From positions 124,001 through 188,000 of IMG/VR virus record IMGVR_UViG_3300027573_000779: a DNA stretch of 64,000 bases. One strand, written 5' to 3'. The translations under genes were made by a program, and so were the position numbers. Shown piece after piece: positions 34,940 to 57,061 of this stretch; positions within the stretch are counted from its first letter, which is position 1; the number at the start of each line of letters is the position of its first letter. The notes beneath the pieces were generated by a model, which worked only from the letters and a program-made list of their open reading frames with translations, ran no database searches and was not told the origin of the DNA.

Positions 34940-35451
34940 CTCCCAATAATAAAGAGTTTTTTTATCTTGTCAAGCTTTTCTCAAAATGCCTTTGCAATAA
35001 GCCACAACGTTTTGAATCAAAAAAGACTATTAAAGCTATAAAGCTCTCAATTAGCCATCGGGGATAGCGCAATTTTAGCCAAAGAAATTTCCAAATCGGC
35101 GCTAATAAGCTTTTCTTATTTTTAATATACTTCGTTGCTGCCCAACGATTTAAAACCGCAATAGGCTTGTATCCCATGGGGTAAAGCCAGATAAAACGTA
35201 ATACTTCTGTCATTATTCCCCATTGTATCAGAAATTTTTACGTTGGCAAGAGGGGGGACCTCCCCAATGGGCTAAACGTAGATTGGATATGGATAATTTT
35301 CTTTTTGCTCTTGAGTTAGAAAGATTTGCATCCAAAGACTGCCAGCTTCAGAGACTTTTATATCTTGTGGAAGCTGCCCTTTGCCTAGCGCCACGAAAAA
35401 GTCTTGTCTTCTAATGAGATAAAGCTTCATATGCTCAAGCGCCGCAGGGCT

Positions 35452-37487: not shown

Positions 37488-37781
37488 TTAATTTTTTAGA
37501 GTATAACCCGCACCTTTTAAAGCTGTTTCGTGGTCATAACCTCCCCTATAAGACCCTTCAAGCTCGCTCCAATTCAAAATTTTTCCTTCAGAATCAGCAG
37601 CAAAGATGTAAGTTTCAGGACCAGTAAACATTGCATCAGCCGCAGAAACTACTACATATTCATGCTCTTTAACTTCCATCCCCCCAATGTCTTCAGCATA
37701 ATCTTTTACTTTAATTGGCGGGTCAAGTTTATACAAAACTTTACCCTTAGAGAGAGGTTTAATTAGGGTTGCGTAATTCAT
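37488..37781 (-). CDS. Conserved phage hypothetical protein
   Basis: YVVVSA...GPETYIFAAD...WSELEGS...DHETALKGAGY pattern recalled from other phages. Confidence 0.65.
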   Translation of the reverse strand: MNYATLIKPLSKGKVLYKLDPPIKVKDYAEDIGGMEVKEHEYVVVSAADAMFTGPETYIFAADSEGKILNWSELEGSYRGGYDHETALKGAGYTLKN

Positions 37782-38657: not shown

Positions 38658-38826
38658 TCAAGCACCAAGGGGTTGAACTAACTCCTCATCGTCAAAAAAC
38701 CAGCAAACATAAAGAGAATTTCTGGCATTAGTGCAAAAATCGCGCATTTGGACAAACTCAGTTCTTAATAAACTCTGAGTTCTGCCACTGAAACCGCTCG
38801 CCAATTGCTAAATCCTTAAACCTCAT
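38658..38826 (-). pseudogene. Frameshifted small gene
   Basis: MRFKDLAIGERFQWQNSEFIK continues after a +1 shift as TEFVQMRDF...EELVQPLGA*. Total length is 3n+1; its promoter is intact. Confidence 0.55.
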
Positions 38827-38863
38827 AAGAAAGATTATATATAGTCTTTTTAAAAAGACAAAG

Positions 38864-38889
38864 AAAAAAGCCCCCAAAAGGGGGGCTTT
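38864..38889 (-). terminator. Rho-independent terminator
   Basis: AAAGCCCCC/GGGGGCTTT stem with T-tract on the - strand. Confidence 0.85.
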
Positions 38890-38996
38890 AGCCAATTTAT
38901 TTGATAGACCTATATAACCCTTCAAAAGGGCCGGTTGGCGGCACTATCTTTTTAACGACTTTTAGCTACGCCGTATGAATTAGCCAACCCTATCAC
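38864..38996 (-). ncRNA. Candidate structured small RNA with its own promoter and terminator
   Basis: Promoter TTGCTT-16-TAAGCT at 39003-39030; stems UGAUAG/CUAUCA, GGUUGGC/GCCAACC and GGCCCUU/AAGGGUU; terminator at 38864-38889. Confidence 0.55.
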
Positions 38997-39057
38997 TTGA
39001 AAAGCTTAACAGATTTTTTCCAAAAAGCAACAATAAAGCCCTTCGGCGTCTGAGAAT

Positions 39058-45998: not shown

Positions 45999-46554
45999 AT
46001 GCGCTCAAAAGCCGCGAGGCTTAGTAATTTTTTGGTTAACGCCGCAGGGCTTAATTGCCCTTAAAGCTATAGACAAGATACACTATCTTTTTAAACTGTC
46101 AACGCTCTATGAAAGGCTATGCTGTATATGAGCTAAGTATGAGGCTCTTTTAATCTTCTTCTCTGCTAGGTAAGCTGCCTTTCTCTCCCTTTTGTTTGGG
46201 AACAAAGAAAGCATAACGTCTTCGTGATTTGTGGAATTACCTAATGCGTAAAGAAGATTTTCGGTTTCAAATTGGGTTAATTGAAATGTAACTTTCATAT
46301 TGAATGCAAACCTGTTTTCTCAAGCTCTTCAGGACCAAAAGCAACATTTAACATATCAACCGTAACAGAATAGCAACCGTTTTCGGGTATTAGTCTATTT
46401 ACAACCCCACATTGACCTTTCCATGCGCCAGTGAGGATTCTAACCCTGTCGCCAATATTAAAGGATTGCTGTTCTTCTTTTGAGTCTTTATTCATCTGTG
46501 GGGATTATACAAAATCTTTTTAAAATGTCAATGCTCCAAAGCCGCAGGGCTTTT

Positions 46555-56065: not shown

Positions 56066-57061
56066 TTAATAGTCCTGATTTAAAATCTTGACCGACAGTG
56101 ATTTACCAAGAATTGGGGAATATTTGGGCGTTATTGGTCGCAAAACAATCCCCTCTGCCTTGCGCTCTTGTCCTGTAGATGTGAGATAAATAGCCTTGTT
56201 AGCTTCTTCCTGAAGCCGCGCCATGGTCCAAGTATCATCAAATGTAAAAGGTTCACTAACAGGAATAACCACAGGAATTTGCAATTGGTTGCATAACTCA
56301 TTTATTTCCTGCCAGTTATACCATTTGCCAGTATCAAATTCTTTAACATTAAAGACAAACATCTGAAAACTGTTCAGGCCCAATGGGTTACCTTGAATTT
56401 TGCCCCCGCAAGCCTCTGCTTGAATAGCAATGTTTTTACCCAACTCTTTAAGCTTAGAAGTTAGATTATATTGGTCTGCAATCTTCCAAAAGCCGGTCCC
56501 TTCTTTTTGCTCCAGCCGCCGACTGCAAACGCGAACTTCACCGTTTTCATAAATCACAGTCATTGAAGAACCGTCAGCTTTGATAGTTAAATAACAAAGT
56601 TCATTCCTAAACTCTTCTAAAATCTCTGGATAGTTTTGAATGTTTTCTTCGTCTGTAATTGAGATTAAATGAGTAGGAAAAGAACCCTTGGCGTCTCCAT
56701 TAACAGAAGAATCAATAGGTTTGTCGTATTTTAAAATACCTAAAGCTTCCGAAACGTCCGAACCTTCTTCAACCTGATAGTTATAGCTTGGAATGATAGT
56801 TAAAGGGCAAACTAAACCCTGAGAAGGAGAGCCGCGAAACTTGGCGTTCCAGACACGATATTTTTGCCTTTCTAAAAAACTAAAATAAGAATTCGCGCTA
56901 GGAACAATAGAGTCAATACGAATAAACACCACTAAATCGCCGTTTTTATATTCTCCCTTCTTAACCACAACAGGCCATTCTTTAATTTTGGCGACTTCAA
57001 GAGAGTCGGCGTTGAAATGTGGTTGGACGCTATGAATTCGTTCAATTGTGGCTAATTTCAT
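56066..57061 (-). CDS. RNA ligase, DRB0094/Rnl5-like family
   Basis: KLATIERI...GDLVVFIRIDS N-terminal OB-like domain; motifs TIKADGSS, IQAEACG, FVFNV, EGIVLR and SVKILN. Confidence 0.9.
   Translation of the reverse strand: MKLATIERIHSVQPHFNADSLEVAKIKEWPVVVKKGEYKNGDLVVFIRIDSIVPSANSYFSFLERQKYRVWNAKFRGSPSQGLVCPLTIIPSYNYQVEEGSDVSEALGILKYDKPIDSSVNGDAKGSFPTHLISITDEENIQNYPEILEEFRNELCYLTIKADGSSMTVIYENGEVRVCSRRLEQKEGTGFWKIADQYNLTSKLKELGKNIAIQAEACGGKIQGNPLGLNSFQMFVFNVKEFDTGKWYNWQEINELCNQLQIPVVIPVSEPFTFDDTWTMARLQEEANKAIYLTSTGQERKAEGIVLRPITPKYSPILGKSLSVKILNQDY

What the first reader, a model, noticed from the sequence alone, without database searches (positions are those of the whole stretch)
38864..39030. 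Candidate novel small RNA: three-way junction with an alternative pairing
A family promoter (39003-39030) and a strong terminator (38864-38889) enclose ~130 nt with only a 14-codon GTG ORF. P1 is UGAUAG/CUAUCA (38990-38995 with 38902-38907), P2 is GGUUGGC/GCCAACC (38983-38989 with 38933-38939) closing an A-rich arm, and P3 is GGCCCUU-UUG-AAGGGUU. GCUAAUU (38978-38984) can instead pair with AAUUGGC (38891-38897) next to the terminator, which competes with P2. It may be a decoy or antitoxin-mimic RNA, or a switch. It lies next to the nucleoid-protein-like gene.
Basis: partly seen in the sequence, partly recalled or inferred. Interest (0 to 1): 0.6.

Follow-up and report, generated by a model that had tools for sequence, protein, structure and literature searches.

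The report
Conserved small phage RNA, function unknown
A roughly 135-base stretch between two early genes of an uncultured 209-kb groundwater phage is most likely a real small non-coding RNA, because a distant relative keeps its core sequence, promoter and terminator, but its conserved fold is not the one first proposed and its job is still unknown.

Summary

**What is there**
- A weak member of the phage's early promoter family lies at 39030-39003.
- It is followed by about 135 nt that hold only a 14-codon GTG frame.
- A strong terminator lies at 38889-38867.

**Evidence for a real RNA**
- The core fold is not unusually stable (z = -1.0).
- Rfam has no family for it.
- A syntenic relative, L209 (GP88 protein 66% identical), has the same unit. 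It keeps the promoter hexamers and 16-nt spacing, a 36-nt core (31/36 identical, three 1-nt indels) and a terminator.
- The flanking genes are only about 67% identical in DNA, and the upstream proteins cannot be aligned.
- L209 has no start codon at the RNA's 5' end, so the peptide reading fails.

**Which fold is conserved**
- One arm of that junction has three compensatory pairs.

**Limits**
- A second relative, L208, carries only a truncated remnant.
- Only two full copies exist, no transcript data are available, and no target prediction is significant.

**Verdict:** probably a genuine new phage small RNA of unknown function.

The parts
39003..39030 (-). Weak early-family promoter: -35 TTGCTT (39030-39025), 16-nt spacer, -10 TAAGCT (39008-39003). 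The predicted start is near 38996-38998.
   Evidence: Weight-matrix score 12.4 bits against 14.0-35.9 for 38 validated members; about 1 chance hit per strand per genome. The L209 homologue has TTGCAT-16-TAAGAT at the same relative place.
38952..38996 (-). 14-codon GTG frame that starts exactly where the family's leaderless genes start (6 nt after the -10). Judged not to be the product.
   Evidence: All 44 leaderless genes use ATG. L209 has no ATG, GTG or TTG 5-9 nt after its -10, and three 1-nt indels break any frame in the conserved core.
38950..38985 (-). Conserved 36-nt core (RNA nt 12-47): GGCUAAUUCAU, the CGGC...GUCG hairpin, and UUAAAA.
   Evidence: 31/36 identical to L209. Local alignment score 41, against 14.6 +/- 2.3 for 3000 shuffles (maximum 27).
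38978..38985 (-). It overlaps the 3' end of the P2 5' strand.
   Evidence: Pairs with 38897-38890. In L209 this helix is part of the minimum-free-energy fold. Two one-sided changes and one mismatch between the two sequences.
38890..38897 (-). 3' strand of the closing helix, directly abutting the terminator stem.
38956..38973 (-). Hairpin H1 (CGGC/GUCG) with a GCUAAA-containing loop.
   Evidence: The stem is invariant in both sequences. It is predicted by RNAalifold on a plain MAFFT alignment and present in the L209 minimum-free-energy fold.
38903..38948 (-). Arm H2: GAUAG (38948-38944) pairs with CUAUC (38907-38903). It carries the window-specific hairpin P3 (38932-38916).
   Evidence: L209 has CGGAG/UUCCG in the same columns: three pairs changed on both sides and one on one side. 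P3 is absent from L209.
38983..38995 (-). This competitor strand pairs with 38939-38933 and 38907-38902 and excludes both the closing helix and H2.
   Evidence: Fold A is -42.8 and fold B is -40.9 kcal/mol in the window RNA. In L209 the analogous competitor fold is -41.5, against -46.4 for fold B.
38861..38889 (-). Intrinsic terminator plus U tail. It is the only strong terminator downstream of the GP88 gene and the 131-aa gene.
   Evidence: Positionally conserved in L209 (1520-1546) and L208.
38834..38861 (-). The next family promoter (TTGTCT-16-TATAAT), which drives the leaderless ATG at 38825. It bounds the unit.
   Evidence: Weight-matrix score 20.9 bits; geometry.

Best explanation
This is a small non-coding RNA gene in the phage's early region.

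Shown:
- A weak early-type promoter sits inside the 3' untranslated region of the upstream 131-aa gene.
- A strong intrinsic terminator follows about 135 nt later. It must also end the upstream mRNA, because that gene has no terminator of its own.
- The sequence will therefore exist both as a free RNA of about 135 nt and as the tail of the upstream message. This is the layout of bacterial small RNAs that have their own promoter but share a terminator with the upstream gene.
- The conserved part is a three-way junction. Its closing helix is GGCUAAUU/AAUUGGCU, stacked against the terminator. It has an invariant hairpin (CGGC/GUCG), a UUAAAA junction and a variable third arm.
That gives a second fold within 2-5 kcal/mol in both phages.

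Inferred:
- The RNA acts in trans.
- My preferred guess, held at roughly 0.15-0.2, is base pairing through the conserved AUUCAU block. That block is the exact complement of AUGAAU, the commonest 5' end of this clade's leaderless mRNAs.
- The two folds would expose or hide that block.
For: Architecture:
- Promoter, terminator and the absence of a real ORF.

Homology:
- L209 keeps the gene order GP88, a leadered 115-aa gene, this unit, leaderless small genes and DUF2958.
- It keeps promoter hexamers of the same unusual type (TTGC-T / TAAG-T, 16-nt spacer), a 36-nt core with 31 identities and three single-base indels, and a terminator.
- The core similarity has a z of about 11 against shuffles.
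- Among 1206 tiles of the window, only the candidate matches L209's RNA body.
- The neighbouring genes are 66-67% identical in DNA.
- The upstream proteins are not alignable by BLASTP.

Structure:
- The L209 RNA has a z of -3.49, and its minimum-free-energy fold is the junction closed by the 'alternative' helix.
- RNAalifold on a plain MAFFT alignment recovers H1, H2 and the terminator, with three compensatory pairs.
- On a model-fitted alignment 95% of cells pair, against 23-50% when the partners are slid.
- The fold-B model scores L209 at 20.5 bits, against 7 bits for the fold-A model.

Precedent:
- A family-like promoter also precedes the phage's tRNA-Met gene, so these promoters do drive non-coding RNA.

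AUGAAU:
- 14 of 44 leaderless genes in this phage start ATGAAT.
- So do 15 of the 20 family-type promoter hits in L208 and 6 of the 8 in L209.
Against: - Only two full sequences exist, so the covariation has little power (54 of 500 shuffles reach the observed values). That alignment was also fitted to the model.
- The window RNA's own fold is not more stable than shuffles (z -1.03).
- The promoter scores below every validated family member and matches the sigma-70 consensus at only 6 of 12 positions.
- L208 has lost the RNA body and its -10 element, so the unit is dispensable.
- A more distant relative, L214, has only a terminator at this position.
- There are no transcript data. All four sequencing runs that hold the region are DNA and are identical across the RNA.
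- Target prediction is not significant. The best site is the start codon of the gene at 37781 (17 of 19 nt), but 33% of shuffled RNAs do as well.
- In L209's best fold most of AUUCAU is paired.
Confidence: 0.5

Rival explanations
1. This is only a structured 3' untranslated region and terminator module of the upstream leadered gene. The promoter-like sequence does not fire. The structure protects the mRNA's 3' end, or is cut out of it later.
For: - The upstream gene has no terminator of its own in either phage, so its transcripts must run through this region to 38867.
- The promoter is the weakest of its family.
- The unit always follows the same leadered gene.
Against: - The unusual hexamers TTGC-T and TAAG-T and the 16-nt spacing are kept in L209, while the surrounding spacer sequence is not alignable.
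- Chance hits at this score are about 1 per strand per genome.
Confidence: 0.2
2. This is a decaying remnant of an early gene cassette or of duplicated promoters, with no present function. The fold is incidental.
For: - Core fold z is only -1.03.
- L208 shows the unit being deleted.
- The RNA contains a 14-nt copy of the family promoter's spacer, flanked by no promoter hexamers (38955-38942).
- The GTG sits exactly at a leaderless start position.
Against: - The 36-nt core is 86% identical where the neighbouring genes are about 67% identical and the upstream protein has diverged beyond alignment.
- H2 changed sequence but kept its pairing.
- L209's RNA is markedly more stable than shuffles (z -3.49).
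Confidence: 0.14
3. This is a leaderless mRNA for a 14-residue peptide (VIGLANSYGVAKSR).
For: The GTG lies 6 nt after the -10 element, the modal distance for the family's leaderless genes (22 of 44).
Against: - All 44 leaderless genes start with ATG.
- L209 has no start codon at that place. The homologous frame there meets a stop, and single-base indels separate the conserved blocks.
- About 90 nt of structured RNA would follow the stop codon.
Confidence: 0.04
4. This is a cis-acting switch (riboswitch, attenuator or anti-termination RNA) that controls read-through into the downstream genes.
For: - Two mutually exclusive folds are predicted in both phages.
- The junction's closing helix abuts the terminator, as in many riboswitches.
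Against: - The terminator hairpin is intact in both folds, and I found no anti-terminator pairing.
- The next gene has its own stronger promoter only a few bases after the terminator, in all three phages.
- There is no Rfam match.
Confidence: 0.05
5. The conserved blocks are DNA sites, for example an operator for the adjacent AT-hook-like protein or for a factor that reads the promoter-spacer box. They are not an RNA.
For: - The block GTTAAAAAGAT resembles the family promoter's spacer (15 minus-strand copies against 2 plus-strand copies in the genome).
- The unit always neighbours the putative DNA-binding gene.
Against: - Compensatory changes in H2, and one-sided G-U/G-C changes in the closing helix, make sense only for RNA.
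- L209's single-strand fold has z -3.49.
Confidence: 0.05

Closest known systems
Bacterial small RNAs that have their own promoter inside the upstream gene's 3' region and share its terminator (for example DapZ of Salmonella and MicL of E. coli; from my own knowledge, not tested here)
   Same: A promoter lies just after or within the end of the upstream gene. One intrinsic terminator serves both the mRNA and the small RNA. An A/U-rich stretch and a U tail lie at the 3' end. There is no ORF.
   Different: No Hfq, seed or target is known, and the host is unknown. The body is a three-way junction rather than a simple seed plus hairpins. It is encoded by a phage.
Phage small RNAs with their own promoter and terminator, such as lambda OOP RNA and P22 sar (from my own knowledge)
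   Same: A short, independently terminated transcript in a phage regulatory or early region.
   Different: OOP and sar are antisense to a neighbouring gene. Here nothing is encoded on the opposite strand, and no significant complementarity was found to the upstream leader or to any start region.
Riboswitch aptamers built on a three-way junction, with the closing helix next to a terminator
   Same: A three-way junction whose closing helix abuts a terminator, with a competing alternative pairing.
   Different: The terminator is not part of the alternative pairing. The downstream gene has its own promoter. There is no Rfam family match.
Bacterial RNase P RNA class A (RF00010)
   Same: L209 gives a partial, 5'-truncated match of 15-18 bits. 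Short words resemble the two strands of helix P4 (CGGCUUA and AAAGUC).
   Different: The score is far below the 100-bit gathering threshold. The alignment runs through the promoter. The window copy gives no such hit. I treat it as chance.

Membership tests
Any Rfam 15 family | Covariance-model score at or above the family's gathering threshold | tested here: not met
   No hits in the whole window at gathering thresholds. The E-value scans of the window copy and of L209 give only terminator-driven hits and one weak partial hit.
tRNA / tmRNA | Cloverleaf recognised by ARAGORN | tested here: not met
   No tRNA or tmRNA in the window. The genome's five tRNAs lie elsewhere.
Independently transcribed small RNA sharing the upstream gene's terminator | Own promoter upstream of the RNA body | tested here: inconclusive
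   A family-like promoter of 12.4 bits, weaker than all validated members but rare by chance. The hexamers and spacing are kept in L209. There is no 5'-end data.
Independently transcribed small RNA sharing the upstream gene's terminator | Intrinsic terminator that defines the 3' end and also serves the upstream mRNA | tested here: met
   A strong terminator at 38889-38867. No other terminator follows the 131-aa gene. The arrangement is the same in L209.
Independently transcribed small RNA sharing the upstream gene's terminator | No conserved reading frame | tested here: met
   The 14-codon frame is absent from L209, and 1-nt indels lie between the conserved blocks.
Independently transcribed small RNA sharing the upstream gene's terminator | Sequence and structure conserved beyond the neighbouring sequence | tested here: met
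   31/36 identity, z about 11. Three compensatory pairs in H2. This rests on only two sequences.
Independently transcribed small RNA sharing the upstream gene's terminator | A stable transcript of the predicted size, and identified targets | not testable with these tools
   All four runs that hold the region are DNA. The best predicted target is not significant (P = 0.33).
Riboswitch / transcription attenuator | Alternative pairing that includes or excludes the terminator stem | tested here: not met
   The terminator hairpin is unchanged in both constrained folds of both RNAs.
Riboswitch / transcription attenuator | Downstream gene depends on read-through | tested here: not met
   A 20.9-bit family promoter lies between the terminator and the next ATG. 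The same holds in L209 and L208.
Leaderless small-protein gene | Start codon at the transcript's 5' end, kept in relatives | tested here: not met
   A GTG is present here, but all 44 family genes use ATG. There is no start codon in L209.

The most novel reading that the evidence does not exclude
This would be a bistable phage RNA whose conserved AUUCAU block pairs with the extreme 5' end (AUGAAU) shared by most leaderless early mRNAs of this phage clade. By hiding their 5'-terminal start codon it would tune or shut off a whole class of early genes. The two competing folds would expose or bury the block. As far as I know, no small RNA has been shown to work by masking the 5' ends of leaderless mRNAs.
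Probability: 0.1. Interest if true: 0.8.

Novelty: new member of a known kind. Interest (0 to 1): 0.42.

Why it matters
Few non-coding RNAs are known from uncultured large phages, and almost none have any comparative support. This one now has a homologue, a testable conserved fold and a defined competitor fold.

It sits in a phage whose early genes are almost all expressed as leaderless mRNAs from one promoter family. That makes it a candidate regulator of an unusual mode of gene expression.

If it proves to be only a structured mRNA tail or a decaying remnant, the result still matters. It shows that the fold predicted from one sequence was not the conserved one.

Tried and rejected
**Searches for a known family or more homologues**
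- Rfam at gathering and at E-value thresholds: nothing real. The partial RNase P class A hit on L209 (15-18 bits) is rejected.
- ARAGORN: no tRNA.
- The 131-aa upstream protein has no relatives by word search or viral scan.
- The 65-aa downstream protein gave one weak locus.
- Terminase relatives are 49% identical or less.
- GP88 loci L002-L005 and L211-L213 are not syntenic. The DNA for P0005's contig was unavailable.
- The fold-A model found nothing in the phage's own genome or in four relatives' whole records, nor in 80 viral loci that carry the P2 words.
- Exact-pattern scans:
  - viral contigs: none, or unrelated coding sequence;
  - metagenome contigs: only the source contig;
  - genome contigs: four chance hits, at most 11.7 bits with the fold-B model.
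- A 20.6-bit hit at L208 8823-8911 lies inside a leaderless 61-aa gene and is taken as chance.
- P0124's context (L214) has only a terminator.
- The nearest cultured phages share 25% terminase identity or less, so the host is unknown.

**Reads**
- The four sequencing runs are all DNA and are identical across the RNA, so they give no expression data and no variants.

**Target searches**
- Against 318 start regions, the best hit is not significant (P = 0.33).
- Against the upstream gene's leader in both phages, there is no signal (P = 0.68 and 0.47).

**Not used**
- The large representative-protein search, structure prediction, complex prediction and any non-standard genetic code were not used.

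Full report
**Setting**

The window is bases 124001-188000 of a 208,933-bp virus record. The record is 37% G+C, CheckV rates it 100% complete, and its source contig is Ga0208454_1000014. The DNA occurs in groundwater and freshwater-sediment runs. No cultured phage is close: terminase identity is 25% or less. The host is therefore unknown. The candidate lies on the minus strand, in a long run of small minus-strand genes.

**The observation**

- The promoter TTGCTT-16-TAAGCT lies at 39030-39003.
- The terminator lies at 38889-38867, with 9 pairs and a U run.
- The only frame is GTG plus 13 codons (38996-38952).
- P1, P2 and P3 are the minimum-free-energy fold, mostly with pair probabilities above 0.94.
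- The alternative pairing of 38984-38978 with 38897-38891 exists.

Stability gives no support. For the core without the terminator z = -1.03, and 15% of shuffles fold as well. The z of -2.09 for the whole unit comes from the terminator.

**The promoter family and the GTG frame**

The spacers of the early region share one promoter type, roughly TTGACA-nTTTAAAAAGATnTTG-TATAAT with a 16-nt spacer.
- In 44 cases an ATG-initiated ORF of at least 50 codons begins 5-9 nt after the -10 element, and in 22 of them the distance is exactly 6 nt. Simulated genomes give about 0.9 such cases. These genes must be expressed as leaderless mRNAs.
- The candidate's GTG sits exactly 6 nt after its -10 element, so a leaderless peptide was a serious rival.
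- Against it, all 44 genes use ATG.
- The candidate promoter scores 12.4 bits, below all 38 validated members (14.0-35.9). Simulations give only 0-2 hits of that strength per strand. The real genome has 58 on the minus strand and 5 on the plus strand.
- A family-like promoter also precedes the phage's tRNA-Met gene, so such promoters do drive non-coding RNA.

**Search for relatives**

Rfam, ARAGORN and many sequence routes gave nothing. The four runs holding the region are all DNA and show no variant in the RNA.

The neighbouring GP88-family gene did lead to relatives. Two proteins are 66-67% identical to it, and their contigs are syntenic.

In L209 (an ENA assembly) the gene order is:
- GP88;
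- a leadered 115-aa gene;
- a 221-nt gap;
- leaderless small genes;
- DUF2958.

This matches the window. The L209 gap holds the following:
- TTGCAT-16-TAAGAT;
- then about 135 nt;
- then a terminator at 1520-1546;
- then a family promoter and a leaderless ATG.

**Homology of the RNA body**

With promoter and terminator removed, the two bodies share a 36-column local alignment with 31 identities and three single-base indels.
- The score is 41, against 14.6 +/- 2.3 for 3000 shuffles (maximum 27).
- Among 1206 tiles of the window's minus strand, only the candidate reaches that score.
- The flanking genes GP88 and DUF2958 are 66-67% identical in DNA.
- The upstream 131-aa and 115-aa proteins cannot be aligned by BLASTP.

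The core is therefore under stronger constraint than its protein-coding neighbours. The indels rule out a coding constraint. L209 has no start codon 5-9 nt after its -10, and the aligned frame there meets an early stop. The peptide reading is effectively refuted.

**Which structure is conserved**

L209's RNA is clearly more stable than shuffles (z -3.49). It also has a hairpin CGGCUU/AAGUCG and an arm AGCGGAGA/UUUCCGCU.

The window RNA can adopt the same architecture, which I call fold B:
- the closing helix 38985-38978 with 38897-38890;
- H1, 38973-38970 with 38959-38956;
- H2, 38948-38944 with 38907-38903, carrying P3.

Further tests favour fold B:
- RNAalifold on a plain MAFFT alignment recovers H1, H2 and the terminator. 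H2 has three pairs changed on both sides and one changed on one side.
- A covariance model of fold A finds L209 only locally (7 bits, E about 5).
- A model of fold B aligns L209 end to end (20.5 bits, E 0.001-0.008).
- On that model-fitted alignment 95% of cells pair, against 23-50% with slid partners. The closing helix shows two one-sided changes and one mismatch.

These counts rest on two sequences, and 54 of 500 shuffles reach the same values, so they are indicative and not conclusive.

P2 can also form in both RNAs. If a bulged C is allowed in L209, one G-C pair becomes A-U. P1 and P3 have no counterpart in L209. Both RNAs are therefore predicted to have two exclusive states that share the GGC of the closing helix.

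**Loss in other relatives**

L208 (an NCBI assembly, GP88 67% identical) keeps the following:
- the -35 element and the spacer;
- a mutated -10 (TCCAAC);
- only the 3' part of the RNA;
- the terminator.

The body is deleted. A more distant context, L214, has just a terminator. The unit is thus dispensable and evolves quickly.

**Function**

The terminator is intact in both folds, and a stronger promoter follows it in all three phages. Control of read-through is therefore unlikely.

The upstream gene has no terminator of its own. Its mRNA must carry this sequence as a tail, and the internal promoter would add a free RNA of about 135 nt. This is the layout of small RNAs that share a terminator with the upstream gene.

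Target searches were negative in the statistical sense.
- The best site among 318 start regions is the start codon of the gene at 37781 (17 of 19 nt), but 33% of shuffled RNAs do as well.
- The upstream gene's leader shows no signal in either phage.

One lead remains. The conserved block contains AUUCAU, the exact complement of AUGAAU. ATGAAT begins 14 of 44 leaderless genes here. It also follows 15 of the 20 family-type promoter hits in L208 and 6 of the 8 in L209. This was noticed after the fact, the pairing is short, and much of the block is paired in L209's best fold. I hold it at low probability.

**Verdict**

This is most likely a genuine, previously undescribed small non-coding RNA of a phage early region (about 0.5). 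The main rivals are:
- a purely cis-acting structured mRNA tail (0.2);
- a decaying remnant (0.14);
- minor rivals: a cis-acting switch (0.05), DNA sites (0.05) and a peptide gene (0.04).

It is a new member of a known kind, and its interest is moderate. The leaderless architecture of the whole early region, noticed in passing, may be the more remarkable feature. A published map of phage phiKZ transcription start sites detected no leaderless transcript (PMC8244752).

Noticed in passing
window about 34000-64000 minus strand, continuing to G000 about 205000; also L208 and L209: Nearly all early genes are leaderless. 44 ATG-initiated ORFs of at least 50 codons start 5-9 nt after the -10 element of one promoter family (16-nt spacer with TTTAAAAAGAT), against about 0.9 expected. 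The same family and geometry occur in two relatives, where most such genes start ATGAAT. A published phiKZ transcription-start map detected no leaderless transcripts (PMC8244752).
   Followed up: partly
window minus strand near 35450, 37802, 40906, 43693, 46020, 46736, 54247, 54473, 57224, 59847, 60310, 60813; one inverted copy on the plus strand at 39038-39054: A 20-nt intercistronic motif, about GCCCUGCGGCGCUUGAGCAU, mostly lies between a stop codon (TAA) and the next ATG. There are 12 minus-strand copies. The single inverted copy overlaps the end of the 131-aa gene, 8 nt upstream of the candidate's -35. In minus-strand RNA it would be antisense to the other copies (15-16 of 17 pairs). It is absent at this position in L208 and L209. 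Its function is unknown; it could be a coupling or processing site.
   Followed up: partly
window 38825-38658 minus strand: The gene just downstream looks split. ATG 38825 gives 22 codons up to a TGA at 38759-38757. A related-looking frame then continues one base over, to the stop at 38658. The site reads AAC-TGA-G. The sequence is identical in the public assemblies that cover it (X1, X2 and X3). It could be a +1 frameshift site or a broken gene.
   Followed up: no
window 57204-57062 minus strand: A second short unit: a family promoter (21.9 bits), an ATG 4 nt after the -10, an 18-codon frame, then a strong hairpin (57098-57071) directly before the ATG of an RNA ligase gene (56066-57061). It could be a leader or another small RNA.
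   Followed up: no
window 41001-40891 minus strand: A family-like promoter (11.8 bits) is followed by about 60 nt, then a small hairpin with a T run, then a copy of the intercistronic motif before the next gene. This is another possible short non-coding unit.
   Followed up: no
window 38955-38942 minus strand (inside the RNA): A 14-nt string, TTAAAAAGATAGTG, is identical to the spacer of the family promoter at 46102 but has no -35 or -10 element around it. TTAAAAAGAT occurs 15 times on the minus strand and twice on the plus strand of the genome.
   Followed up: partly
G000:C1 208779-208905 (outside the window): tRNA-Met lies about 16 nt downstream of the predicted start of a family-like promoter (8.2 bits). 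The genome has five tRNAs in all.
   Followed up: partly
L209 1340-1464: A partial, 5'-truncated match to bacterial RNase P RNA class A (15-18 bits, gathering threshold 100). It is driven by words that resemble the two strands of helix P4. I judged it to be chance.
   Followed up: yes
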